DNA from: Mytilus californianus
Taxonomy: Eukaryota
DNA length: 64,000 nt
Assembly: GCF_021869535.1 (NCBI RefSeq)
Contig: NW_026262734.1
Location: forward strand, 64,108,001 to 64,172,000
Direction: 5' to 3'
The translations under genes were made by a program, and so were the position numbers. Numbering within the stretch: the first letter of the stretch is position 1; each line of letters starts with the position of its first letter. This document shows positions 8,656 to 63,996 of this stretch, one piece after another. A model generated the notes under the pieces. The model saw only the letters and a program-made list of their open reading frames with translations. It was not told where the DNA came from and did no database searches.

Positions 8656-9756
8656 TATATAGTTAAAAAAATTGCTTATAGAATCTGAGAAACATTTCAT
8701 ACACCAAATATAGTTGACCTACTGCTTGTAGTATCGAAGATATGGATTTGACCACAAAAACTTATCCTTGATCACGGATTTATAACATGATGTAAAGGTC
8801 AGATGAACCCTGTATGATGGACATTTAGGCCTTGCAAGAAACCCATTTATCAAATATAGTTATCCTATTATTCATAATAATTAAGAAATTCCCATGACAA
8901 AAATCTATAATTTTTCTAAGCAGTCGTTGAAACATAAAAATGAGGTCAAGGACAATGGATGTATGATAGATAGAAACTTTGTAAAATAGCACATATGCAT
9001 ATAAGGTATAAAGCATCCAGGTCTTTTATTACATATATCAGTGTCATGGTTAAAAGAATGAAAGGCCATAATTCCTGAATGGCAAAAGTGGAAATTGACA
9101 ACATTGAACATGACTTCAATTTTGCCATCTGTTACAACATATTGGCAAATACATTGGTTGAACAGTTCCCAACATATTGCACAGAAATGACATAAATGCA
9201 TTTTCCAATCAATCAAGGACTAACTCCTGAATGGCAAAAGTGAAAGTTTGAAAAGTATCAGATGAACTAGAACAGATCATTAAGTAAATGCACTGAAACA
9301 ATTTGAACCGACTGCCATCCAGCTGTACATTCCTAGATCAATAACATAGGACATTTAATCCAGATGACTATGGTGACTGTCACAAATACATATATTCATG
9401 TGTTTTTCTTCTAAAAATGTTACTGCAAAATCTATTCTCCTTATTTACATGTCTTTATGTCTTATTTTTAAATATAACATCAATTTATCCATTGCCCTTC
9501 TAAAAAAAATTAAGTACACGAATATAATTTGAACAGTTTACACCTGTATATTTTGTATCAATATGTTTATTATCCATGTTATCCCAATAACTATACATAC
9601 ATCTATTTTTCACAACCAAGTGCATCAATGACCATTATCTGTCATTTTTACATGTATAATAAATTTTAAGCTTATTATTCATAGGTTAATACAGAAATGT
9701 TATTTACAAATTCCTATTTATTTAAAAATACAGTGCATCTTAACAATAAGTGTTCA

Positions 9757-10003
9757 TCATCTCCTATAGTCTGTTCTTTTTGATGATCCTGATAGAACTC
9801 TCCCTCTTGATCCTGATCTTGCTCTTTGTTCACGATTCCTATCATATCGGGGATCACTGTCTATTGTTCGACCTTGTCCATTTTCTTTTCCACGTTCTCC
9901 AGCTGACAGAACTGGTTTCCTTCTCTGTTGTCCAAGCATAGACATTAACATTTGGAGCACTGCTGTAGGAGCAACATTCATTTTCAGCAAATCTAGTATT
10001 ATC
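9757..10003 (-). CDS. MZT2: MZT2 (MOZART2) last coding exon
   Basis: Acceptor tttttttctcag|G. Translates (K)IILDLLKMNVAPTAVLQMLMSMLGQQ..., matching the MOZART2 core KILVDLLKLNVAPLAVFQMLKSM. The phase-2 join with the upstream exon is exact. Confidence 0.92.
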
Positions 10004-11639
10004 CTGAGAAAAAAAGTATCTCATAATCAAAGGGCTTGGCTTTGAGAGAAAAGTTAATAGTTTATCACAAACAATGGCAAATAAAGATATCATAAAAGGA
10101 TGATTTTGAGTTCCCAAAAAACACTTCTTTGACCTCACCACATGTTGATGTGCCTGCCCAAAATCAGGAACTTTGTCTGTGTTTCCCTTAGTTATGTATA
10201 TATTGTACATGTATATCAGAAGGGAATTGGATGTTTATGACAGGTCTCTGATTCTATCTGTTGGAAATTTTTCACCCTTAAACTCAAGACAATTCAGACT
10301 TGAAATATTCTACAGATGCTTGTCTCTTATTCAAGGCTGTGGTACATGTATGTTGACATTTTGATATTTTTTTGTGTCATTGGGGTGCTTTTTTTGTGGT
10401 GTATACTCAAAAACTCCCTTTGTTCATGTTTAAATTAGTTGTACATGTTGTTGTGTTGTAATTAAAGTCATAGGAAAATAAAGAGTAGAATTTTGACAGA
10501 TCCAAAAAGCTAATCACTGCCAAGCTGCTGACATAATATGAAGTCACAGGGGGTGTAGGAGACAGGGCAAAAACAAACCCATATGTACCATACACTTTAT
10601 GGCAAAAAAATAATGAATGAAGATGAAAGAGGACTGACTGACTTCTAGACTACATGTATTAGACATAAGAAAAGAGTATGTTTTTTAGCTTGTCAATTTC
10701 AGAAGTTTGGTCATTCTATTCAGTAATGCCTAAAAAAACTGTGACACAAATATTTGTTCAACTAACAGACAGAGGCACAAGGTGAAAATAAAAACAGTAT
10801 GTGTTTGTGGGGCAAAGATGCTCCTTCCTATGTAACCCGTTTAAGCAACTTTAAGGGGACAAGCATTTGATATGTCTAAGGGGTTACGGATGATTTTGAA
10901 AATAAATGACCTCACATTGCAACTAGCAAAAATAAATAATCTTCCAAAGGGTGGCTTGGAAATAGTTTTACATCTATCTATTTATGTATACCTGTAATCA
11001 TTTCTAAAATTCCCCCTTAAGTTAAATTACTGAAGTTATTGAATTCTCAGGAAACATAACTTCACTATTTTCTGCAGTATCCAAGAATCAAGTGAAATAA
11101 TTCTGTAGACAAAAGTGAAATAAGTAAAATTTGGACTGAATCTGTGTTAAATGGGTCCTGAACTATATTTCTAAATTTAAAATAATTTGGTGGAGAGTTT
11201 ATGTATATGTAGTTATAGTGCAGTTACAAAAAAAACATTTTTAATAGAATCAATATATCATGGGGCATAACTCTAAAAAGACCATAAAAATCAACTTGGG
11301 ATCTTTATAAAGTGGTCCTAATTATGCTAATATTTCAAATGAATTGGTGAAGGCTTATTTAAGTCATTGTCTACACACCAAAAATATGGCTATTTTCCAC
11401 TTTATCAAGGGGCTTTACTGATACTCTGGAAAGACAATAATGGTAGTTGTCTTTGACAATATTTCCATTTCAATTTCTATTGATTTGGTGGAGACTTACT
11501 AAGGTTGGCATCTGGAAGCCAATCTAAGGATATACCATGTACATACCTACTGTACATTAAACAATCAGGATATGAAACAAACAACTTTCAATCATGGCCT
11601 CTACAGATCTACACATTACATACAAGACTAAGAACTTAC

Positions 11640-11758
11640 TTGAAAACACTTGGATCAAGTGTGATGCCTGCTAGCTGTGAAAGTTCATACAACTCTGCTT
11701 CATCCAAAGTGAGAACATTTTTACTCAGTAATGTATATTTGAGTGTTTGTTGTGACAT
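11640..11758 (-). CDS. MZT2: MZT2 first coding exon
   Basis: ATG at 11758 gives MSQQTLKYTLLSKNVLTLDEAELYELSQLAGITLDPSVF(K) with donor AA|gtaagt. Matches MOZART2 KVLSTEEMELYELAQAAGGAIDPDVFK. Confidence 0.92.
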
Positions 11759-12453
11759 TGTAAGATCAAGTCATTCGTAAACACCTGCAATAAATACAAA
11801 AGGTTGTGACATTGTAAGATCAAGTCATCAGTAAACACCTGCAATAAATACAAAAGGTTGTGACATTGTAAGATCAAGTCATCAGTAAACACCTGCAATA
11901 AATACAAAAGGTTGTGACATTGTAAGATCAAGTCATCAGTAAACACCTGCAATAAATACAAAAGGTTGTGACATTGTAAGATCAAGTCATCAGTAAACAC
12001 CTGCAATAATACAAAAGGTTGTGACATTGTAAGATCAAGTCATCAGTAAACACCTGCAATAAATACAAAAGGTTGTGACATTGTAAGATCAAGTCATCAG
12101 TAAACACCTACAATAATACAAAAGGTTGTGACATTGTACATGTTGTAAGATCAAGTCATCAGTAAACACCTACAATACTACAAAAGGTTGTGACATTGTA
12201 AGATCAAGTCATCAGTAAACACCTGCAATAAATACAAAAGGTTGTGACATTGTAAGATCAAGTCATCAGTAAACACCTGCAATAATACAAAAGGTTGTGA
12301 CATTGTAAGATCAAGTCATCAGTAAACACCTGCAATAATACAAAAGGTTGTGACATTGTAAGATCAAGTCATCAGTAAACACCTGCAATAATACAAAAGG
12401 TTGTGACATTGTAAGATCAAGTCATCAGTATACACCTGCAATAAATACAAAAG
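11749..12453 (-). repeat. 13-copy tandem array of a 53/54-bp unit containing the MZT2 3' splice site and start codon
   Basis: Units start at 11749, 11803, 11857, 11911, 11965, 12018, 12072, 12125, 12187, 12241, 12294, 12347 and 12400. Minus-strand unit: cttttgtatttattgcag|gtgtttactgatgacttgatcttacaATGtcacaac. Confidence 0.97.
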
Positions 12454-13840
12454 GCAATGAATGAAATATTAAAATACAATTTTGTATTCATGGTATTTGT
12501 ACAAATATACAATGTATTATTTTAATATTATATGAATTAGACTTGGGATGTCATGGATATAGTTCTGCTAATTTGGCTTCTTATACATTTCTGATCTGGT
12601 TTAATATTTCAGTGTTTACAGGGACACATATTGAGTAGATTACATACAGCTATGACAAAAAAGGGTATGTGGGAAGACTCCATTTTGTGTAATTCCAAGA
12701 TTAAACATGTTAAAGGAGAATTGTTATAAGACCAATTTTTCAGCACCTTGAATTTGAAAATAAAAAAGTATTAAAAATCTTTTTAGTATTAAACTTCCTT
12801 CATATGTTGTAACGAAGATAGTCTCCCAGATATCACATTTTCAGTATTTTTATTTTTGAATTTTCGCTTAAACATTTACTGGATAGCTTCAAACTTCTTC
12901 CACTTTTTGCAAAAGCTGCTAAATAGCCTCATTCTGAGATCTTGTCATTAAAATTAAGCAATGAACAAAGACCTTACATAAAAATGTATTTTGCTACATG
13001 TATAAGATGTCCTGCACAAAGATCTAAATAAAGGTAAAATGATTTATGGTAAGGTCTAAGATTGCATCTTATTTTGTCTAAAACAATATGTATAATGGCC
13101 TTTAAAGGTCAAATGTCAGTTGTTATGATGATTTGATGTCACAGTGACATCACAACTGACATATACAGTCAGGGGAATTACTGAAGTAAGTAATTTTTAA
13201 ATCACTCATTTAAGTAGAAAATTGGTAATTCTGTGATTTTATAGTTTTATCAAAATTTTAAATATACAGGTTTAGATTATATCTAATTATTAGTAAAACT
13301 GAAAAAAATGGACCTTTTGCTTCTTTTAAGTAGCAAGGTTTATGCCGTTGATGCAGTCACTCATCTGTAAATTCTAAATTTGTTGAAAAAAATGCTATAA
13401 TGAAGGCTTTACATAATGATCTAGTACTTTCTTAACAGATTTTTTCCAGCAGTGGGAGTATTTTTCCAGTAAAATTCAAGGTTTCAGCTTACAGATTAAA
13501 TGCAATAAAATTTTACTTTCGGGGGTGTTGAAAATAGTGGGGGGTAATTAAAGAAATAATATTGAAAGAAGTGATTTTTTAAAAGAAAATAGAGGTTTGA
13601 TTCTTAAACAAGTGATTTTCATGTTATTATCCCAGATTCAGTACAGGGTCATCACCTGACATGACTGGTCATCCTATAAACGCTGATGTTGGTTCTGATA
13701 ATTTTAGCATCATAATTAGTTCCAGGATCATTAATATTATAAATTTAAAGCTACAATAAAATTCAATCACTTAGTCTAGTGATTTATTTGTACTACTTAA
13801 AAAGGTGATTATTAAAGTAAGACTACTCTTATTAATATTA

Positions 13841-15835
13841 CCCAAGTCAAAGTGGACAGCAGTTCTTTAGCAGTTTATTAGCATTCACAGTTCTTACTCG
13901 ACAGCTGTTCTTTAGCAGTTCATTAGCATTCACAGTTGCCAAATTCAAGGCAATAGTTAATTTGCATATAGGCATTCCAATAGCATTCCATAGCAGTTTC
14001 TTAGCAGTTTATTTAGCCTTCACAGTTATTTAGCAGTTATTTGTGACGAAAAATTTAAATGAGATACTCAAAAACTGCTATCTTCTCTGAATATTCATGA
14101 GAACTGTTATAATAACAGCTATCAATAATGAATATTCATAGAAACTGCTAAGTTGTATATCCTAATATGGTTTTCTAAACTGCTAATAACTGCTATGAAA
14201 TGGAATGCTGTCCCAAGTCAGGAGCCTCTGGCCTTTGTTAGTCTTGTATGTTTCTTAGTTTTAGTTCATTTACATGGTTTGGAGTTTAGTGTGAAGTCCA
14301 TTTTCACTGAACTAGCACACAATTTTATTTAGGGGCCAGTTGAGGACCACCTTCGGGTGCGGGATTTTCTCGCTGCATTGAAGACCCATTGGTGGCCTTC
14401 GGCTGTTGTCTGCTCTTTGGTCGGGTTGTTGTCTCTTTGACATAATTATATTCCCCATTTCCATTCTCAATTTTATTGTCAGATCTGTCAAAAGTTGGAA
14501 TACAAAGGTACACATGAATATATACAGTGTACAAGATATGAATGCAAAAATAAAATTCTAATATTTTACTGCAAGTCTTGTCGAAATTTCAAAAAGTTGT
14601 ACCAACTTATATTTGTAATTTGAGCAGTAACTGCAATCAAATGACTCTATTTTAATCCAATAACAGACTTGTTAAGGGGTGTAAACATGCTTTGTGAGTA
14701 CTGTACCTGGCCTTATACCCCTTATTAATTATGTCAGTGGCAGAATTATAGGAACAGTTAAGCATTATAATGCACTTTAAATATCAGTGCTTATAAAAAG
14801 CAACTTATTCAATAAGAGTGGTTACTTAAGAGACTATTTATTACCTTGACTAATTGATATTCAGATTAAAAGTTATTTTATTTTTAGTATTATTTAATTA
14901 CCAAATGTACTACTAATTTCTCTTCTACTATATATATTTTGTGTGGACCAAAAGAAAACAGTTATCTCCTCTTTCTCTTTTGGAATTAAACAAAATAATT
15001 CTTAATACATGTAATATATTATGTTTCCACTTTCTGAAACAAACTTAAGTAACATATATTAACTTCATTAAATGGATTGTTTGGTCAATATTAAACAATC
15101 AATATGTGACCTAGGTTTTCCTAATATTCCCTCCCCCTTTTTCAACTCTTGAATATGATTTATTTTTGGGTTTTTTTACAAAACTATACTAAAATATTCA
15201 TATTTTTATTTTCAAATAACATCTTGCACTGTTAGTATATGCTAGTATTTTATTACAATCCTATCATCATCAGATATTCTATTTGAATAAACAACTATCC
15301 CCCCTTTTTTGGGCTTTCTGTATTATTTCTGTTTTTCCCTACAAAGTTATGTCAGAAAATACATGTGTATTATCTGTAACTTCAACTTACTGTACTGCAG
15401 GTGTGAGAAATTATTCCATTTAGCCCAAATTAAACTTTATAATTGACAAAAATACAGTTTTTCACTAGCAAGTATTAACACACAACTTGGAGCCAAAATG
15501 CACATTTGAAAATGATGAAATAACCTTCAAATAAAGGTTTACTATCAAGCTGAAAACACAGCCAGATCCAAGCATTTTTATAACAAAGATTAAAACCAAA
15601 ACTGCTATCAAACTGCTATTGAACTGCTGTCATATCTGTTGTCAATTGACAAAAAACAGTTTAGAAGGTAGATCCAGACTGCTAAGAGGAATGCTAAGAA
15701 ATGGTGAAATAAGGCAGTTTCTCAAACTGCTATTAGATGGAATGCTATGAACAGCTGAAAGACTGCTAAAAATATGAAGAACTGGTAAATAACAGCTAAT
15801 AAACTGCTAATGATAGCAGTTCAGTTTGACTTGGG
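13841..15835. mobile_element. Non-autonomous CMC/EnSpm (CACTA-like) element
   Basis: TIR CCCAAGTCAAA/TTTGACTTGGG, TA on both flanks, and dense AGCAGTT/AACTGCT subterminal repeats at both ends. Confidence 0.7.
14210..14477 (+). mobile_element. SINE-like interspersed repeat nested in the CMC element
   Basis: gtcccaagtcaggagcctctggcc... to ...ccattctcaattttatt. It shares the cccaagtcaggagcc motif with the 8270 family and interrupts the subterminal repeats. Confidence 0.55.
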
Positions 15836-17279
15836 TAAGTACCATGAGTACTGGCAACCTTTCTGGACAAAAGTTACTTGAATAAGTGATTTAAGAAATC
15901 ACTCATTGAAGTAATTCCCCTAAATTGATATATATCCTTTTCAGTTATATAAATATATCAATTAAAACAGTACAAGATATTTTGAGAGGATTGAAAAGTT
16001 TTACTATTATTGTATTTTCAGGAGCCAGGTAATAGCTAATATCACCCCTACTCCTATGTACAGAATTACATTTAAAACTTAAACATTTAAGATATAAGCT
16101 TTAAACTATAAATTTGCAAACAAATCATGTTAATGTTCTGACATCCTTAAAAAAAAACAGACACAACAACTGACATAAAAAGTATAATTATAATTATCAT
16201 GATTATCACGATTATAGTTCAATATATCAAAGCATTAAATTTTAAAAGGAATACTGATGTGACAGTAAACAGAATAATTTCAAAAAATTAAAAAAGCAGG
16301 CCTAGGACTTTAATGCTATAACATCCACAAAATTAAGACATGTGTAAAACAAAATTTGCAATATATATATACTGTCATTACTGTGGTATGTTGAATTGCT
16401 TTTCTGGTGACTTGTTGCCTTTCAATTTTGGAAAAATATTGCAAAATATTGCTTATCTTCCTGGGTTGACCCCATGAGTTATTTCTAAAAAAAAATCAAT
16501 ATCCTTTGCAATTATACTTGATAGTGTCTTGATCATGACTTGTTTTAAATTTTGAATTTGAACTTACTTATTATTAAAGTTTTCATTATGCTAACTTTTA
16601 TGCCTAGCATGTCTAGTCTTTAATGGAACCATGATGGCAAATTAAGTTCTTCTTTAGTAAATATAACCAATAATTTGGATGCGAAGATATCACATCTACA
16701 AAATGTATGATTCGTATATATACACTGTACCATCATAACTATCTGATTTTGTTACAACTTGTCTATGTATACAATCGATGTATACATAGACAAGTTTTCA
16801 ATTTCGATTTCATGAATGGGGAAAACACGTTATTGGACATTGTGCTGTGAATATATAAATGTATTTATAAAATCAAGGATTTGCACAGTTCTACTATACA
16901 AATCCTTGATGATTGATTGATATTGTTGGTTGCTTAACGTCCAGTGGCACAATTCCATGACAAAATACATGTAACATACATAATTTGGTAATGGTGATTT
17001 TTAAGAATTATGTGAGCTATTTCCCAATTTTTTTTACGATATACGAAACTGATGTAGTAATAAAATTTAAAGTTATTTCATTAATTAAATTATTATTAAA
17101 TTAAAAAAAATTAAATTAATCCTCTTCACCTTTCTACATAGGTAAAATCTGCCTCATATATTTTACTTTTGAAATAACCTTTCAATCATCAGTTTCAATA
17201 ATTGGTCTTGATGTGTCTGCATAGATTGAACATATACATGTATATTGAAACAAGCCGGTTAGCTGGTTAGTGTTTGGAC

Positions 17280-17560
17280 ATACTTCACTTCACTTCAACC
17301 GGAAGTAGATATTTTGTCAACAAATGTAGGAATAATTTTTACTACGTAAAAATAATCCCCTGAACATGTGGTCTTTTTGGAATGGTTGCATGTATTTTTT
17401 TGTGCATATCTAATTTGAAAAATTTATTTGACTATCAAAATGATTTTTTCCATTGTAATGAATATAAATAGATTAGAATATTTCAACAGCGGAAGTCGTA
17501 TGCATAAATGATATTCAGCGATGACGTTGGTCACTGTCATCAGACCATTTTTCGTTTGAC
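17280..17560. promoter_or_regulatory. Putative bidirectional promoter between MZT2 and OSBP
   Basis: Genes are head-to-head. ETS-type motifs CCGGAAGT (17299-17306) and GCGGAAGT (17489-17496) and a CRE-like ATGACGTT (17521-17528) are present. The MZT2 non-coding first exon is inferred but not located. Confidence 0.5.
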
Positions 17561-17586
17561 TTGTATTTGCTGTCTTTTAATAAGTC

Positions 17587-17711
17587 ATGGCCGAAACCAG
17601 GCCTCAACACCAAGCCCAATATAGAGGCTGGCTGTACAAATGGACAAACTATCTTCGTGGTTATCAAAAACGATGGTTTGTTCTTCAAAACGGACTACTG
17701 TCCTACTACAG
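17587..17711 (+). CDS. OSBP: OSBP exon 1 (PH domain N-half)
   Basis: [41 protein letters not shown](R), donor AG|gttggt. Confidence 0.95.
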
Positions 17712-18179
17712 GTTGGTTTCCTGATCTGGCTAGACCACATCAAAACTATATCCACAATACTTAAGTTAGTTTATGCTGAATGAGACAATTGCATTTACAT
17801 TTTCCATATATAAATGGTCATATTCTGTTGAAAAATATAGACCTTACCTCTATTTTGGAATCTGCTACAGCCTACAGTTGACCTGAGAATATATAGACCT
17901 TTAATATAGCTATTTGGCAATCTGGAACACTTGACCTCAGAATTTGCAACACTCGAACCATTGAGGTCACACAACAATTGCTTTTCCTTTGTGGCATCAG
18001 ACATGTTTTATTGTGACATCAACATTTTATGGAAACCTTTGTGATGTCCAGTAATGCCTAATGGTGGACAAATAGCAATCCGATGTATTTGCATGACCAT
18101 GATGACTTGAACTATTGACAACATCACATAGCATTTAATGTTGATTCCTGGTCTAGTGCTTATGCTTGAAGGCTACAGT

Positions 18180-18400
18180 GCTGAAGGTCCCGTGTTTCAT
18201 CCCGACTTGGAATGCTGAGATTTTCACCCTCTCACACATTTCTGGTACCCTGACCAAGTTGGTATGTTGTGGGCCTCGGTTGGTCAAAGTGGTCCCTTCC
18301 AAGTTGTCTGGTTGTTCTCTACGAGTATTTCGGCTTTCTCCACCATAATAACAGACTTCTGGGTGTCCTAACACTACCTTACTGTTGGATTGGGGATTTT
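18180..18400 (+). mobile_element. Degenerate SINE with a V-domain-like segment
   Basis: ttctctacgagtatttcggctttctccacc resembles the V-SINE central motif. The match is by eye only. Confidence 0.35.
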
Positions 18401-18471
18401 TCCTTGGTGGTGGGTTATACAGAAGTTAGTGACACATCTCCATTTGTCCTGTAAGGGAGTGTACATGGATA

Positions 18472-19177
18472 CAGTGAAACTTCTCTAAACTGGTCCCTTT
18501 GAATATCGGTTCTCCCCTCATACCGGCCAGATCAAGAAGTCCTGGCCGATTTGTATTTAATTAAATGGTCATGCAAATATTGACTCCTACAAGTCAATAA
18601 GTTACCAAAATTGGTAAACTTAAAGACCCAAGCATATTTATAAAAAGGTCATGCATCTACATGAAATTATGACAACTTTGAAAGACAATGCTTTGTCTTC
18701 TAAGGAAAAATATGCATGAGAGCCTAAAAAAACGGAGATAATGTTTATTAACCTTACAATGCAACCATCTGGAATCACACAAAATGAGGAAAATAATCTA
18801 TGTTAAGTAAAAATGTTCAATTAGATAATTAATTATAGATAGCTCAGGTACTTGTGAACTCTTAGACAGGCTTAGGATGTCATAGGTGGTGCAGTTTGGC
18901 TACCAATTAAAATTAAGTCTTTTCATAAAAATAAATAGACCTAAACAAGTCTGTCATTTTCTGACTTAAATAAGTCTGAAAATGAAAGTACATTTTTATA
19001 AGAAATACATCTTTTGACTTATGCAAGTCAAAAATAAAAACCGACTTGTTTATGTCTGAGCCCTGACTGTTGAAGGGAAGTAACCCTTATGATTTCAATT
19101 TTCAACAAACCAGCCACAACCGCAAACTGGCCGTTTTCCGTGGTCCAACGGGTGGCGGGTTTTGAGAAGTTTCACTG
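18472..19177. mobile_element. Tc1/mariner-pogo type MITE
   Basis: TIR CAGTGAAACTTCTC/GAGAAGTTTCACTG with TA on both sides. Confidence 0.75.
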
Positions 19178-20203
19178 TACCCTGGCAGCCTTCGAGTGGA
19201 GCTCTGAATAACGGAGGTATCTACCAGTACATACATTTCCTTTGTGGTGTTTAACATTTTCTATTGTGATGTCAAAATTTTATGGGGAACCCTTGTGATG
19301 TAAAGTAATGGCAGAGAAATTGAATACTTCCAGTTCGTGTACTTTCCTGTTAATTTCCATCGTCACAATGCTTATGTTATTATGTCACAGTACTTATAAA
19401 CTGATTGTCCAATGACGTCATTCACACAGATGGACCTTTGGTGAACTGGTGCAACTCATTTAAAACAGCAACTTGAGATTAGTGTATACATGTCATGCAT
19501 GTTGCGATGAGGTGTGTTGAATGTTCAATAACTTAAAAAATAATGGCATATGGTAGATTTACTTAGAAATGCCTTCTCTTATTTAGCTAACAATGGAATG
19601 GTGATTCAGTACCCCCAAAAAAACGTGTATACAGAGATATTTCAGAGTGAACCGTCATACTCCTTATCACTATTTGTCTGCCATTACTGGACATCTTAGA
19701 GTGACCAAAAAATTTTACATCACAAGAGAAAAGTGTTTTATGTATCACATTAGTTGTTCAAGACATCATGTACATGTGTCACAAACTTCCAAATAGCAAT
19801 AAGGTCTATCGATACCGCTTAAACATGATTTTTAGATCCATGTCATATTGTATGAAGGTCTAGCTGTGTTTAAAATTTACTGAACATACATGACATAGAA
19901 TAATGGTCAAAAAGTGCAGAATAAAGGTATAAAAATAGTGGGTATTGCTTAAGTCATTTTATGATCACTAATATACATTGTACAAGAAATGTATATTATG
20001 TTGTATATGGAGCATCTGGATGGGGTCTTCTTATCTTTTATTCTTAAATTTTTCTAATATTTTTGCCCATTTTTCTCTATTTTTTAAGATATAGCACCCA
20101 ATTATTCTCTATTCTTTATTTTGTATTTTTTGCCCATGAATCTCTATTTTAAAACCCCATCTTCTAGACCCTTATGCATGAATATACAGTACATAATAAA
20201 TTG

Positions 20204-20345
20204 CAGAGGCAGATTTAGGGGAGGGCAGAGTGCCGCCCCCCCCCCCCCCCCCCTTTTGTTGGAAAAATTTGATTGATTTGTAAGGGAATCACTGAGGCAT
20301 GACTAAGCAGGCCCACTCTTATGAAAATTTCTGGATCTGCCACTG
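20204..20345. mobile_element. Short MITE with a poly-C tract
   Basis: Imperfect TIR cagaggcagatttag / ctggatctgccactg, with AATTG on both flanks. Confidence 0.6.
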
Positions 20346-20418
20346 AATTGAATATGGTCAACCTTAAGAGTTACAATTTTGATTTATGTAACTATATACA
20401 AATTTATGTTTTTTTCAG

Positions 20419-20624
20419 AAACCAAGCTGAGATGGCTCACACCTGCAGGGGAACTATTAACCTTGCCAATGCCTTTATACATACAGAAGATTCCAATACA
20501 ATTGTGATATCAAACAGCGGATCCTCTACATACTACCTGAAAGCAACATCGGAGGTAGAGCGACAGAAATGGGTAACTGCATTAGAATTGGCTAAAGCAG
20601 AAGCTGTCAAAATGCAAGATACTG
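20419..20624 (+). CDS. OSBP: OSBP exon 2 (PH domain C-half)
   Basis: ttttttcag|A; NQAEMAHTCRGTINLANA...YLKATSEVERQKWVTALELAK; G|gtaagg. Phases match the neighbouring exons. Confidence 0.95.
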
Positions 20625-21789
20625 GTAAGGACCTGAAATCTCACACTTAGCCCTAGTCTGTAAAATTTTTGATGTTAAATATGAATTATTCACACAGGTA
20701 ACGGTATGTTTTAAGGGTAGAATAATAGATTACACGATAAGCCCGCGTTTTTCATCTATTTACACTTTTTAAGAGGAAAGTAAATTTCATTTTAACAAGC
20801 TTCACCACTGGGGCTATATTTTGATATAGTTGTCATGGTTACAGTGGAAATTTTATGTGAAGAAATTGAGGAACAGGAAATATAAGTTCTATAAAAATTT
20901 ACATGTTTATTTGTCAACTATAAAAATCTGCAATTGTAAATTTTTATAGAACTATTTCCTGTACTTTAATATCTTCACATTAATTAAATTTCCACTATAA
21001 CCATTATAACAATTATTGAAGTATTTGTAGAAGAAGAACTCATACGTAAAGCATGTATATTTAATAGTCATTAATGCTCTAACAACATGTCTAATAGGTA
21101 AAAATCAATAATGACAGTATTAAACAATCTACAAGTAGTGTTGATATTACATAATAAAACAGTGTTCCTATGCTGCATGTGAATTAATTAAAACTTGACA
21201 AGGTTTTGATCTTCTCTTTTACTGTGGAGGCTAGTCTGTTACATATATACTCAGCAAATCAGTTTCTGCACCACTTCTTTCCAGTTTGAATTATTCTCTA
21301 GAGTGTCAGAGTTCAAGCTTTCTACTAATCTTTAATATTTTAATAAGATTGAAGAGAGTGTGTAGGGTATAAGTCATTGAGATAGTTCGCATTTAACAAA
21401 AAAACTTGCGACTTAAATTGATTGTTAGTCTTGAGCGATTGAGTAAACTTGCGATCAATTTTAGTTGTAAGATTTTTGTGATAAAAGACACAGACAACTA
21501 AAAAATATGCATGTTTTTTTTAAATTATCTGTAATGACTAGACTAGAGGAATTTTCATTTTTGTAGTGACAAATTGATTTTTTTTAATAAAAAAAGAAAA
21601 ATAACATGTTAATATTATTTCAGATATTTCTTATATTATTAAAAGAGATTTTCCAACAAAAATATTTTATGGATAAAAGAGATGCAGCAAAAGAATTTAA
21701 AACAAATTATGTTTGCATAGAAAGAAGTCTTTTTTAATATTTTTTATTAGAATGAATAGAGGGGGTAGGGTCAAGGACCAATTGAGTCG

Positions 21790-27545: not shown

Positions 27546-28143
27546 TTTTATGCCCACGCCGTAGTGGAGGGGCCATTATGTTTTACCCTTGTTTGTCTGT
27601 CTGTCCATCCGTCCGTACGTCCCAAAATTGGTTTCCGTTCTCTAACTTTAGTTTGCCTCAACTAAATGTTATGAATCTTATACACAATGCTTATTACCAC
27701 AAAACACAGATGAAGTTTGAATTTTGGTGGCGTCATTTTAACCATTCTAGAGTTATGCCCCTTTACAAATGGAATAAAAATTACTGAAATTTTTGTTTCC
27801 GTCCTCTAACTTTAGTTTGCCTCAACCAAATGTTATGAAACTTATACACAATGCTTATTACCACAAAACACAGATCAGGTTTGAATTTTGGTGGCGTAAC
27901 TTTTACCGTTCTAGAGTTATGCCCCTTTACAAATGGAAATATTGCTGAATTTTATGTTTCTGTTCTCTAACTTAAGTTTGTCTCAACCAAATGTTATGAA
28001 ACTTATACACAATGCTTATTACCACAAAACTCAGATCAGGTACAAATTTGGGTAGGGTCACTTTTACCGCTTGAGTTATGTCTCTTTATAACATTATATG
28101 CAAGCGGGGGCATCATCAGTGTCCCATGGACACATTCCCCATT
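27546..28143 (+). mobile_element. HINE-type element with about 3.5 x 136-bp core repeats
   Basis: tttttatgccc...ggggcatc subTIRs, a GTCT/GTCC microsatellite, tandem cores and a 3' hairpin gtgtcccatggacac. Confidence 0.7.
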
Positions 28144-45700: not shown

Positions 45701-46738
45701 CTTGTTTATTCTGGTTACACAAGCTATACCATGGCTATGTTTATTCTGGTTACACAAGCTATACCATGGCTATGTTTATTCTGGTTACACAAGCTATACC
45801 ATGGCTATGTTTATTCTGATTACACAAGCTATACCATGGCTATGTTTATTCTGGTTACACAAGCTATACCATGGCTATGTTTATTCTGGTTACACAAGCT
45901 ATACCATGGCTATGTTTATTCTGGTTACACAAGCTACACCATGGCTTTGTTTATTCTGGTTACACAAGCTATACCATGGATATGTTTATTCTGATTACAC
46001 AAGCTATACCATGGCTATGTTTATTCTGGTTACACAAGCTATACCATGGCTATGTTTATTCTGATTACACAAGCTATACCATGGCTATGTTTATTCTGGT
46101 TACACAAATGTTTATTCTGGTTACACAAGCTATACCATGGCTATGTTTATTCTGATTACACAAGCTATACCATGGCTATGTTTATTCTGGTTACACAAGC
46201 TATACCATGGCTGTGTTTATTCTGATTACACAAGCTATACCATGGCTTTGTTTATTCTGGTTACACAAGCTATACCATGGCTATGTGTATGCTGGTTACA
46301 CAAGCTATACCATGGCTATGTTTATTCTGATTACACAAGCTATACCATGGCTTTGTTTATTCTGGTTACACAAGCTATACCATGGCTTTGTTTATTCTGG
46401 TTACACAAGCTATACCATGGCTTTGTTTATTCTGATTACACAAGCTATACCATGGCTATGTTTATTCTGGTTACACAAGCTATACCATGGCTATGTTTAT
46501 TCTGATTACACAAGCTATACCATGGCTATGTTTATTCTGATTACACAAGCTATACCATGGCTATGTTTATTCTGGTTACACAAGCTATACCATGGCTTTG
46601 TTTATTCTGGTTACACAAGCTATACCATGGCTATGTTTATTCTGGTTACACAAGCTATACCATGGCTATGTTTATTCTGGTTACAAAAGCTAAACCATGG
46701 CTATGTTTATTCTGATTACACAAGCTATACCATGGCTA
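45701..46738. repeat. 35-bp minisatellite, about 30 copies, in the last OSBP intron
   Basis: Unit tatgtttattctggttacacaagctataccatggc with few variants (g/a, a/t) and one short unit near 46090. Confidence 0.95.
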
Positions 46739-61615: not shown

Positions 61616-63996
61616 TTAGCTCACCTGGGCCGAAGGGCCAAGTGAGCTTTTCTCATCACTTGGCGTCCGATGTCCGTCGTCGTCGTCCGTCGTCGTCGTC
61701 TGTCGTCGTCGTCTGTCGTCGTCGTCGTTAACTTTTTACATTTTGAACTTTAAGAGAACCACTGAATGGAATGAAACCAAACATGGCAGGAATGTTCCTT
61801 ATGAGGTGCTGACCAAGTGTTGTTACTTTGAAGCTGATCCATCATCCAAGATGGCCACCAGCGGGGGACTTAGTTTAACATAGGACCCTAGGGGAAATAC
61901 ATACAAATGTCTTCTTATAGAGAACCACTGAATGGAATGAAACCAAACATGGCAGGAATGTTCCTTATGAGGTGCGGACTAAGTGTTGTTACATTGAAGC
62001 TGATCCATCATCCACGATGGCCGCCAGCGGGGGGAACTTCCTTTAACATCAGACCCTATGGGTAATTACATACAAATGCTTCTTCTAGAGGTGCACTGAA
62101 TGGAATGAAACCAAACATGGCATGAATGGTCTTTATGAGGTGCTGACCAAGTGTAGTTACTTTGAAGCCGAACTATCATCCAAGATGGCTGCTAGCGGGG
62201 GACTTAGTTTAACATAGGACCCTATGGGAAATACATACAAATGTCTTCTAGAGAACCACTGAATGGAATGATACCAAACATGGCATGAATGTTCCTTATA
62301 AGGTGCTGACCAAGTGTTGTTACTTTGAAGCCAATCCATAATCCAAGATGGCCTCCAGCGGGGGACTTCCTTTAGCATAGGACCATATGGACAATACATA
62401 CAAATGTCTTCTTATAGAGAACCACAGAATGGAATGAAACCAAACATGGCATAAATGGTCTTTATGAGTTGCTGACCAAGTGTAGTTACTTTGAAGCCGA
62501 ACTATCGTCCAAGATGGCTGCTAGCGGGGGACTTAGTTTAACATAGGACCCTATGGGAAATACATACAAATGTCTTCTAGAGAACCACTGAATGGAATGA
62601 TACCAAACATGGCATGAATGTTCCTTATAAGGTGCTGACCAAGTGTTGTTACTTTGAAGCCAATCCATAATCCAAGATGGCCTCCAGCGGGGGACTTCCT
62701 TTAGCATAGGACCATATGGACAATACATACAAATGTCTTCTTATAGAGAACCACAGAATGGAATGAAACCAAACATGGCATGAATGTTCCTTATGAGGTG
62801 CTGACAAAGTGTTGTGACTTTGAAGCTGATCCATCATCCACGATGGCCGCCAGCGGGGGGAACTTCCTTTAACATCAGACACTATGGGTAATTACATACA
62901 AATGCTTCTTCTAGAGAATCACTGAATGGAATGAAACCAAACATGGCATGAATGATCCTTATAAGGTGTTGACCAAGTGTTGTAACTTTGAAGTCAATCC
63001 ATCGCCCAAGATGGCCGCCAGGGAGGAATATGTTTAACATAGGACCCTATGGACAATACATACAAATGTCTTCTTTTAGAAAACCACTGAATGGATTGGA
63101 ACCAAACACGGCGTGAATGTTCCTTATGAGGAGCTGACTAAGTGTTGTTACTTTGAAGCTGATCCATCATCCACGATGGCCGGTAGCGGAGGAAACTTCC
63201 TTTAACATCAGACCCTATGGGTAATTACATACAAATGCTTCTTATAGAGAATCACTGAATGGAATGAAACTAAACATGGCATGAATGTTCTTTTTGAGGT
63301 GCTGACCAAGTTTTGTTACTGTGAAGCCAATCCATAATCCAAGATGGCCTCCAGCGAGGGACTTCGTTTAACATCAGAACCCTAAGGACAATACATACAA
63401 ATGTCTTCTTTTAGAGAACCACAAAATGGAATGAAACCAAACATGGCGTGAATGTTCCTTATGAGGTGCTGACCAAGTGTTGTTACTTTGAAGCCGATCC
63501 ATCGTCCAAGATGGCCGCCAGGGGGGACTATGTTTAGCATAGGACCCCATGGACAATACATACAATGGCTTCTTTTAGTGTACCACTGAATAGATTGAAA
63601 CCAAACACGGCATGAATGTTCCTTATGAGGTGCTGACTAAGTGTTGTTACTTTGAAGCTGATCCATCATCCACGATGGCTGCCAGCGGGGGGAACTTTCT
63701 TTAACATAAGACCCTATGGGTAATTACTTCTTCTAGAGGTGCACTGAATGGAATGAAACCAAACATGGCATAAATGTTTCTTATGAGGTGTTGATGAAGT
63801 GGTGCTATTTTGTTGCCGATTTACTGTTCAAGATGGCCACCAGGATTTTTTTTATTAAATTACGGGGCCAATATTAAACCAAATTTGGCCTCAATCATTA
63901 TTAGGGTATCTGTTATGATTTAAATCTACTTTTACATGATTTCCAAAACCAAAGTAGAATCAGGTGAGCGACACAGGCTCTTGAGAGCTTCTAGTT
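61616..63996 (+). mobile_element. Helentron-type HINE carrying about 13 tandem 160-169-bp core repeats
   Basis: Inserted in a T run. 5' agctcacctg with hairpin and GTC microsatellite. 3' caggtgagcga, hairpin ggctcttgagagc and tctagTT. The Penelope frame resumes with agac. Confidence 0.9.

What the first reader, a model, noticed from the sequence alone, without database searches (positions are those of the whole stretch)
11749..12453. Thirteen tandem copies of a complete MZT2 branch point / 3' splice site / start codon module
Seen in the sequence: each 53/54-bp unit on the minus strand holds a pyrimidine tract with a YAG acceptor, 26 nt of 5' UTR, a 2-codon uORF (ATG ACT TGA) and the MZT2 ATG TCA CAA. 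A branch-point-like TACTGAT sits about 43 nt before the next unit's acceptor with no AG in between. All 13 acceptors remain AG, and the two variant units change only CAG to TAG. Only the innermost acceptor (exon start 11784) gives a short leader into the real ORF. Each outer acceptor adds two upstream AUGs per unit, about 24 extra AUGs for the outermost (12435). Inference: this VNTR could tune MZT2 translation or NMD, with copy number probably varying between individuals.
Basis: partly seen in the sequence, partly recalled or inferred. Interest (0 to 1): 0.88.

Follow-up and report, generated by a model that had tools for sequence, protein, structure and literature searches.

The report
Minisatellite multiplying MZT2 acceptor and start codon
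In the California mussel, a young 54-bp tandem repeat has copied the splice acceptor, short leader, mini-uORF and start codon of the spindle gene MZT2 thirteen times; four related mussel genomes have one copy, and no RNA data here show that it regulates anything.

Summary
Window 11749-12454 (minus strand) holds 13 head-to-tail units. Each carries a pyrimidine tract, YAG, a 26-nt leader, the uORF ATG-ACT-TGA and a copy of the MZT2 start. The window is Mytilus californianus. The spliced gene (11758-11640 plus 10003-9757) equals the annotated 121-aa MZT2 protein.

- Unit 6 is 62 bp and has an extra AG and an extra ATG.
- The outermost leader has 26 uAUGs.
- The start-codon copy at 12027 opens a 100-codon ORF that overlaps the true ATG out of frame. 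Acceptors 1-8 would therefore give poorly translatable mRNAs.

New context: M. edulis, M. galloprovincialis (two assemblies) and M. trossulus each have one copy, with the same invariant TTGCAG|GTGT acceptor and a conserved 2-codon uORF. A conserved, CpG-retaining block next to the divergent OSBP gene, about 5 kb upstream, is the likely promoter and exon 1.

Most likely this is a young, lineage-specific minisatellite that spans an intron/exon boundary. It mirrors the human F7 IVS7 donor VNTR and is probably near-neutral or mildly hypomorphic. Keeping all 13 AGs is expected by chance (P about 0.8). Acceptor usage, copy-number variation and any tuning role remain untested. The scan's unchecked notes report similar boundary VNTRs elsewhere in this genome.

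The parts
11749..12454 (-). 54-bp minisatellite of 13 units (lengths 54,53,53,53,54,62,53,54,53,54,54,54,54). There are only 6 distinct unit sequences.
12436..12437 (-). Outermost acceptor AG (exon would start at 12435). It keeps the ancestral intron flank with TTCAT branch-like motifs 22-26 nt upstream.
11785..11786 (-). Innermost acceptor AG (exon starts at 11784). It gives the ancestral-type 26-nt leader.
11766..11774 (-). Two-codon uORF ATG ACT TGA in weak context. It is conserved in M. edulis and M. galloprovincialis (ATGACTTGA) and in M. trossulus (ATGATTTGA).
11640..11758 (-). MZT2 first coding exon (ATG at 11758, donor GT at 11639-11638). It hits Pfam MOZART2.
9757..10003 (-). MZT2 second coding exon, including the stop codon. 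AATAAA lies at 9722.
11725..12027 (-). 100-codon ORF that starts at the unit-8 copy of the MZT2 start codon and overlaps the true ATG out of frame. It is present in any leader that begins at acceptors 1-8.
17130..17587 (.). Block conserved in four Mytilus species between the OSBP start codon and intron 1 of MZT2. It has two ACTTCCG motifs (17496-17490, 17306-17300), an ACGTCA motif and a local CpG o/e peak. It is the candidate shared promoter and non-coding exon 1 of MZT2. Candidate donors are AAG|GTTATT at 17178 and AA|GTAAAA at 17166; neither is verified.
17587..21758 (+). Start of the divergently oriented oxysterol-binding-protein gene (PH + Oxysterol_BP, 771 aa; CDS begins MAETRPQ at 17587).

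Best explanation
This is a young minisatellite specific to the M. californianus lineage. It arose by tandem duplication, through slippage or unequal exchange, of a 54-bp piece of the MZT2 gene. That piece runs from 19 nt before the 3' splice site of the 5'UTR intron to 9 nt into the coding sequence.

Shown:
- Each unit repeats a conserved acceptor, the 26-nt leader, a conserved 2-codon uORF and the start codon.
- Only the innermost copy runs into the MZT2 reading frame.
- Four congener sequences carry a single copy.

Inferred:
- Transcription starts at the conserved promoter block shared with the divergent OSBP gene, about 5 kb upstream, so the array sits at the end of intron 1.
- The spliceosome mostly pairs the downstream donor (11639) with one of the inner acceptors. 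These give exons of 145-361 nt, within the usual exon-definition range, so the outer units are removed as intron and MZT2 output stays adequate.
- Any use of acceptors 1-8 makes leaders of 295-677 nt with 11-26 uAUGs and a 100-codon overlapping uORF. Such mRNAs would be poorly translated and prone to NMD.

The net effect is most likely neutral to mildly hypomorphic. I see no evidence of an evolved rheostat.
For: - Array structure and unit contents.
- Gene identity: MOZART2 hits at 1.7e-08 and 3.5e-07. The spliced CDS equals P0004, XP_052073028-30 of M. californianus. The window equals GCA_021869535.1.
- Single copy in M. edulis, M. galloprovincialis (two assemblies) and M. trossulus, with TTGCAGGTGT invariant. 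In M. trossulus the similarity begins only a few nt before the CAG.
- The upstream flank of unit 1 aligns to the orthologous intron end and the downstream flank of unit 13 aligns to the CDS, so this is a clean internal expansion.
- Young or homogenised: 6 substitutions in 706 nt, and 9 of 13 units fall in two identical classes.
- All units carry the californianus-specific ACAATG, where the congeners have AAAATG.
- Promoter placement: a block of 84-85% identity next to the OSBP ATG, against 72-77% for alignable intron. CpG o/e is 0.66-0.78 there and about 0-0.07 across the array.
- Leader, uORF and exon lengths per acceptor.
- The assembly is 45x HiFi/hifiasm with mean reads of 13 kb, which span a 0.7-kb array (PMC9710001).
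- In the analogous human F7 IVS7 VNTR, only the exon-adjacent one of several identical tandem donor sites is used (PMC1557585).
Against: - No RNA evidence was reachable for exon 1, for the acceptor, or for which unit is used.
- The outermost acceptor keeps the ancestral branch-point flank and is transcribed first. Under 'first AG after the branch point' and 'first come, first served' rules it could dominate, which would make this allele a strong hypomorph.
- The three edulis-complex species form one clade, so parsimony alone cannot tell a gain in californianus from a loss in their common ancestor.
- Exon-definition limits are known from vertebrates (my own knowledge, not tested for bivalves).
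Confidence: 0.6

Rival explanations
1. One reading: the array is a selected, copy-number-dependent rheostat. Different acceptors are used in regulated proportions, and each extra unit adds two uAUGs. Alleles with more units, or tissues that choose outer acceptors, would translate less MZT2 or send the mRNA to NMD.
For: - Every unit has a plausible branch site, pyrimidine tract and YAG.
- The uORF is conserved in congeners, and short uORFs also sit within 45 nt of the start in mRNAs of a more distant mytilid.
- uAUG load grows stepwise with the acceptor chosen.
Against: - The array is absent from all four congener sequences.
- AG retention is expected by chance (P about 0.8).
- The response would be a cliff, not a graded one. 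Leaders from acceptors 1-8 contain a 100-codon overlapping uORF in the same strong context as the real start.
- Large minisatellites are common in this window, with three arrays of 700 bp or more in 64 kb.
- The scan's unchecked notes list other boundary VNTRs in this genome, so chance placement is plausible.
Confidence: 0.1
2. The outermost acceptor is the default site because it has the ancestral branch point and is transcribed first. This allele would then produce mainly a 677-nt, 26-uAUG leader and be a strong loss-of-function or hemizygous-tolerated MZT2 allele.
For: - Unit 1 alone keeps the ancestral upstream intron flank.
- The rule of scanning from the branch point to the first AG (established knowledge, from memory).
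- Mussel genomes are highly heterozygous: 2.73% in this individual (PMC9710001).
Against: - An exon of 796 nt flanked by introns of 4.7 kb and 1.6 kb is a poor substrate for exon definition.
- The primary assembly carries this allele of a conserved gene whose coding sequence is intact and identical to the annotated protein.
- The annotation holds three transcript models that encode the normal protein.
Confidence: 0.15
3. There is no 5'UTR intron. Transcription starts just upstream of the ATG (TATTTAT-like box about 35 nt upstream), so the array is 13 tandem core promoters or start sites and the CAG|GT is coincidental.
For: - An AT-rich TATA-like motif lies 32-38 nt before each ATG copy.
- No transcript was available to prove splicing.
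Against: - M. trossulus has replaced the sequence upstream of TTGCAG while keeping everything from the acceptor onward.
- M. edulis tolerates an insertion of about 390 bp with inverted arms 60 nt upstream of the site.
- CpG o/e is about 0 here, as in the gene body, but peaks at the conserved block beside OSBP.
- Several annotated transcript variants share one protein in three species, which implies variation in the UTRs.
Confidence: 0.1
4. Assembly artefact: the array is a collapsed or over-expanded repeat that is not present in the animal.
For: None specific. Tandem repeats are a generic risk for assemblers.
Against: - HiFi reads of about 13 kb at 45x span 706 bp many times over.
- The units carry six distinct, ordered variants, including a 9-bp insertion. 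That pattern is typical of a real array.
Confidence: 0.02

Closest known systems
Human F7 intron 7 37-bp VNTR spanning the exon 7/IVS7 boundary (Borensztajn et al. 2006, PMC1557585)
   Same: A minisatellite whose unit spans an exon/intron junction, so one authentic splice site is accompanied by several identical tandem copies. It is a natural test bed for choice among identical sites.
   Different: F7 multiplies the 5' donor, and the copies lie in the intron and are shown to stay silent. Here the 3' acceptor is multiplied together with the 5'UTR, a uORF and the start codon, so using a 'wrong' copy changes the leader and its translation. Usage is unknown here.
MSY2 minisatellite upstream of primate DDX3Y (PMC3039753)
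   Same: A lineage-specific tandem amplification of a unit that is single-copy in other lineages. It contributes to long, alternatively spliced 5'UTRs thought to control translation.
   Different: MSY2 units (about 100 nt, 2-4 copies) supply a distal promoter or TSS about 0.9 kb upstream. They do not duplicate the acceptor or the start codon, and their transcripts were shown experimentally.
Tandem (NAGNAG-type) alternative acceptors and uORF-mediated translational control
   Same: Competing neighbouring acceptors; upstream AUGs and overlapping uORFs that lower main-ORF translation.
   Different: The acceptors here are 53/54 nt apart and come from a repeat, not 3 nt apart. The uAUGs are copies of the gene's own uORF and start codon.
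Ordinary promoter or 5'UTR VNTRs (e.g. INS VNTR, reviewed in PMC3899988)
   Same: A minisatellite at the 5' end of a gene, probably variable in copy number, that may modulate expression.
   Different: Those act mainly on transcription. This one would act, if at all, through splice-site choice and uAUG load.

Membership tests
MZT2 / MOZART2 gene (PF12926) | Match to the MOZART2 profile above the gathering score | tested here: met
   Exon A 34.6 bits and exon B 30.4 bits against a cut-off of 23.3
MZT2 / MOZART2 gene (PF12926) | The spliced product equals an annotated MZT2 orthologue | tested here: met
   The 121-aa product is identical to P0004, 'mitotic-spindle organizing protein 2B-like' of M. 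californianus
Minisatellite / VNTR | Head-to-tail array of 10-100-bp units | tested here: met
   Period 54, 13.0 copies, 95% matches
Minisatellite / VNTR | Copy number varies between individuals or haplotypes | not testable with these tools
   Only one haplotype of one animal is available. Look-ups of array-encoded ORFs found no other contig
Minisatellite / VNTR | Locus-specific expansion of local sequence, not a dispersed element | tested here: met
   The unit occurs only here in the window. Four congener sequences have a single copy at the orthologous site
Splice-junction-spanning VNTR (F7 IVS7 type) | The unit spans a real exon/intron junction | tested here: inconclusive
   The acceptor motif is invariant in five Mytilus sequences, conservation begins at the site in M. 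trossulus, and the promoter-like block lies 5 kb upstream. No cDNA was available
Splice-junction-spanning VNTR (F7 IVS7 type) | Only one of the identical sites is used | not testable with these tools
   Needs RNA-seq, Iso-Seq or a minigene
uORF-mediated translational control | uAUG with an in-frame stop in the leader, conserved among relatives | tested here: met
   ATGACTTGA or ATGATTTGA 7-13 nt upstream of the start in four species. With so short a leader, the conservation is weak evidence
uORF-mediated translational control | Measured effect on main-ORF translation | not testable with these tools
   Needs Ribo-seq or reporters
Recursive splice site (ratchet point) | Acceptor directly followed by a strong donor, (Y)nCAG|GTRAGT | tested here: not met
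   The sequence is CAG|GTGTTT: only GTG fits, and positions +4 to +6 are TTT
NAGNAG tandem acceptors | Alternative AGs 3 nt apart | tested here: not met
   The spacing is 53/54/62 nt. Only unit 6 has a second AG, 8 nt upstream

The most novel reading that the evidence does not exclude
The array is a polymorphic, functionally used ladder of 13 equivalent acceptors. Acceptor choice or allele length would set the uAUG load of the mRNA for a gamma-tubulin-ring-complex subunit. Inner sites would give translatable mRNA and outer sites untranslatable, NMD-prone mRNA. That would make it a natural, copy-number-encoded expression switch and a natural model for 3' splice-site choice among identical sites.
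Probability: 0.1. Interest if true: 0.6.

Novelty: new variant of a known kind. Interest (0 to 1): 0.35.

Why it matters
If it is real at the RNA level, this locus is the acceptor-side mirror of the F7 IVS7 donor VNTR. Thirteen near-identical 3' splice sites compete in their native context, and the outcome can be read directly as leader length, uAUG load and an overlapping uORF. It could therefore test scanning, 'first come, first served' and exon-definition rules for 3' site choice in an invertebrate. It could also show how a conserved housekeeping gene (MZT2 is a gamma-TuRC microprotein, PMC7416306) tolerates a repeat across its start codon.

More soberly, it shows that minisatellite expansion in mussel genomes reaches into gene boundaries. 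Gene annotation and expression studies in bivalves need to take that into account.

Tried and rejected
1. Transcript evidence:
- The exact-protein look-ups for the M. californianus, M. edulis, M. galloprovincialis and M. trossulus MZT2 proteins returned only genome assemblies.
- Look-ups of the 40-aa genomic exon-A ORF and of the 100-aa array ORF found nothing.

2. Spliced mRNA contigs of a more distant mytilid (L005-L010, 78% CDS identity):
- They have 156-399-nt leaders, but these do not align to Mytilus.
- An apparent 13-mer match to the conserved block was no better than shuffled controls. I dropped that homology.
- The genomic contigs of that species (L011-L014) lack exon A within the 10-kb flank, so its 5'UTR intron could not be mapped.

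3. Readings rejected:
- Dispersed satellite or transposable-element origin: the unit is unique to this site and intron 1 has no ORF of 70 aa or more.
- Recursive-splicing ratchet: the regenerated donor GTGTTT is weak.
- Spliced-leader trans-splicing: not reported for molluscs, to my knowledge.
- Selection keeping the AGs: chance expectation is 0.80.
- A coding role for the array ORFs: they are out of frame with MZT2 and are built from repeats.

Full report
**Observation.** Tandem Repeats Finder reports a single array at 11749-12454 with period 54, 13.0 copies, 95% matches and score 1247. Read on the minus strand, every unit has the same order:
- a pyrimidine-rich stretch (10-12 of 17 positions);
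- TTG(C/T)AG directly followed by GTGT;
- the nine bases ATGACTTGA;
- ATGTCACAA.

The 35-nt core occurs only inside the array in the 64-kb window, where none is expected by chance.

- Unit 6 is 62 bp. It has a 9-bp insertion with an extra ATG, an extra T>G change and a second AG 8 nt upstream of its TAG.
- The innermost unit reads TACGAAT, not TACTGAT.
- The branch-like A lies 42/43 nt from the next AG, and 51 nt for unit 7.

**Gene.** The window is the reverse complement of Mytilus californianus GCA_021869535.1, scaffold JAKFGE010000008.1.
- Exon A is 11758-11640, with donor CAA|GTAAGT.
- Exon B is 10003-9757, after the acceptor tttttctcag.
- Joined, they give 121 aa, identical to P0004, 'mitotic-spindle organizing protein 2B-like'.
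- Both halves hit Pfam MOZART2 above its threshold.
- Only the innermost ATGTCACAA continues into this frame. Every other copy runs into CCTTTTGTA and reaches a stop.

**Comparison with relatives.** I fetched the orthologous loci of M. edulis (L002), M. galloprovincialis (L003, and a second assembly L017) and M. trossulus (L004) through their exact proteins.
- All have one copy of the unit and no tandem array at this position.
- TTGCAGGTGT is invariant.
- The leader and a 2-codon uORF are kept: ATGACTTGA, and ATGATTTGA in M. trossulus.
- In M. trossulus the similarity to the other species begins only a few bases before the CAG.
- M. edulis carries an insertion of about 390 bp with inverted arms 60 nt upstream.
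- The flank upstream of unit 1 aligns with the orthologous intron end (86-91%), and the flank after unit 13 aligns with the coding sequence.

The array is therefore a clean internal expansion of the segment from -45 to +9 relative to the ATG. It is young or homogenised:
- There are 6 substitutions in 706 nt.
- Five units are identical 54-mers and four are identical 53-mers.
- All units share the californianus-specific ACAATG, where the congeners have AAAATG.

The three other species form one clade. Gain in the californianus lineage is favoured by the low divergence between units, not by parsimony alone.

**Is the acceptor real?** No Mytilus transcript could be obtained, so this rests on indirect evidence:
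- MZT2 lies head to head with an oxysterol-binding-protein gene whose CDS starts at 17587.
- Directly beside that start is a block of about 450 nt conserved at 84-85% in four species, while alignable intron runs at 72-77%.
- The block holds two ACTTCCG motifs and an ACGTCA motif.
- CpG observed/expected peaks at 0.66-0.78 over 16.75-17.75 kb. It is about 0-0.07 across the array and most of 9-16.5 kb. That is the pattern expected of an unmethylated shared promoter and a methylated transcribed body (my inference).
- Three species have several annotated transcript models that encode one identical protein, so their UTRs vary.

Together these favour a non-coding exon 1 near 17.2-17.3 kb. Candidate donors lie at 17178 and 17166 and are unverified. 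Intron 1 would be 4.7-5.4 kb and end in the array. I put the probability that the conserved CAG is a used acceptor at about 0.85.

**Consequences of each acceptor.**
- The innermost acceptor gives a 26-nt leader with one weak-context uAUG (TTACGAATGA; the real start is CTTACAATGT).
- Each further unit adds one weak uAUG and one strong-context copy of the real start.
- The outermost leader is 677 nt with 26 uAUGs.
- Most of these uORFs have 2, 8, 12-14, 32 or 41 codons.
- The AUG at 12027 is the exception. Because a 53-nt unit follows it, it opens a 100-codon frame that runs through four 54-nt units and ends at 11725, past the real ATG.
- Leaders from acceptors 1-8 therefore contain a long overlapping uORF, and ribosomes that translate it cannot reinitiate at the true start.
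- Leaders from acceptors 9-13 contain only short uORFs.
- The same split appears in exon length to the donor at 11639: 145-361 nt for acceptors 13-9 and 414-796 nt for acceptors 8-1.

**Mechanism.**
- Shown: the structure, its lineage specificity and the coding consequences.
- Inferred: with long flanking introns, exon definition should favour the inner acceptors. The outer units are then spliced out with intron 1 and the gene works much as in its relatives. Occasional use of outer sites gives untranslatable, NMD-prone mRNA.
- The main counter-argument is that the outermost site keeps the ancestral branch region and is transcribed first, so it could dominate.
- I put the near-neutral or mildly hypomorphic reading at 0.6, the strong-hypomorph variant at 0.15, a selected rheostat at 0.1, tandem promoters without splicing at 0.1 and an artefact at 0.02.
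- The assembly comes from 45x HiFi reads averaging 13 kb (PMC9710001), so an artefact is unlikely.

**Known comparators.**
- The closest is the human F7 intron-7 37-bp VNTR. Its first unit spans the exon 7/intron boundary, so the authentic donor is followed by identical pseudo-donors. These are functional but stay silent (PMC1557585). The present array is the acceptor-side mirror, and its copies also carry a uORF and the start codon.
- The primate MSY2 minisatellite upstream of DDX3Y is another lineage-specific amplification that feeds long, spliced 5'UTRs (PMC3039753).
- NAGNAG acceptors and recursive splice sites were considered and fail their defining features.

**Background rate.**
- The window has three arrays of 700 bp or more and about ten arrays with TRF score of at least 100.
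- Unchecked first-stage notes report other VNTRs at a start codon, a donor and an acceptor elsewhere in this genome. I did not test them.
- This argues that boundary-spanning minisatellites are a recurrent by-product of a repeat-rich genome.

**Verdict.** The array is a real and neatly structured feature. It is a new variant of a known kind (a junction-spanning VNTR), of moderate interest as a natural splicing and translation experiment. There is no evidence yet that it has a function.

Noticed in passing
window 17130-17587: Conserved head-to-head promoter block between MZT2 and an oxysterol-binding-protein gene. It is 84-85% identical in four Mytilus species, has two ACTTCCG (ETS-like) motifs and one ACGTCA motif, and shows a local CpG o/e peak (0.66-0.78) in an otherwise CpG-depleted region.
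   Followed up: partly
window 11766-11774; L002-L004 just upstream of position 10001; L005 about 357-399: A 2-codon uORF 7-13 nt upstream of the MZT2 start is kept in four Mytilus species. mRNAs of a more distant mytilid also carry 4-5-codon uORFs within 45 nt of the start. This may be a conserved uORF feature of mytilid MZT2.
   Followed up: partly
L002:9640-9900 (M. edulis; also in L017, M. galloprovincialis UYJE): An insertion of about 390 bp with long inverted arms (MITE-like) sits 60 nt upstream of the MZT2 acceptor. It is absent from M. californianus, from the other M. galloprovincialis assembly and from M. trossulus.
   Followed up: no
window 45703-46738 and 61753-63820: Two further large tandem arrays: 35 bp x 30 copies, and 166 bp x 12.5 copies. 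The second is G+C-richer (0.42).
   Followed up: no
window 27631-28088; L003:10397-10857; L004:10399-11032: Tandem repeats of about 161-164 bp occur in the window and also inside the MZT2 coding intron of M. galloprovincialis and M. trossulus. Their consensus sequences look similar by eye, which suggests one dispersed repeat family. No alignment was made.
   Followed up: no
L011:3015-5906: In the distant mytilid genomic contig, a retroelement (RVT_1 and an fs1K10_C-type ORF) lies upstream of the last MZT2 exon, and exon A is more than 10 kb away. The 3'UTR of that species also contains internal tandem repeats (self-hits at L011 10174-10445).
   Followed up: no
window 12455-17130: Intron 1 of MZT2 is about 4.7-5.4 kb in M. 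californianus. The spacing between the MZT2 ATG and the OSBP ATG is 1.9-3.1 kb in the congeners. The interval has no ORF of 70 aa or more and no large repeats.
   Followed up: partly
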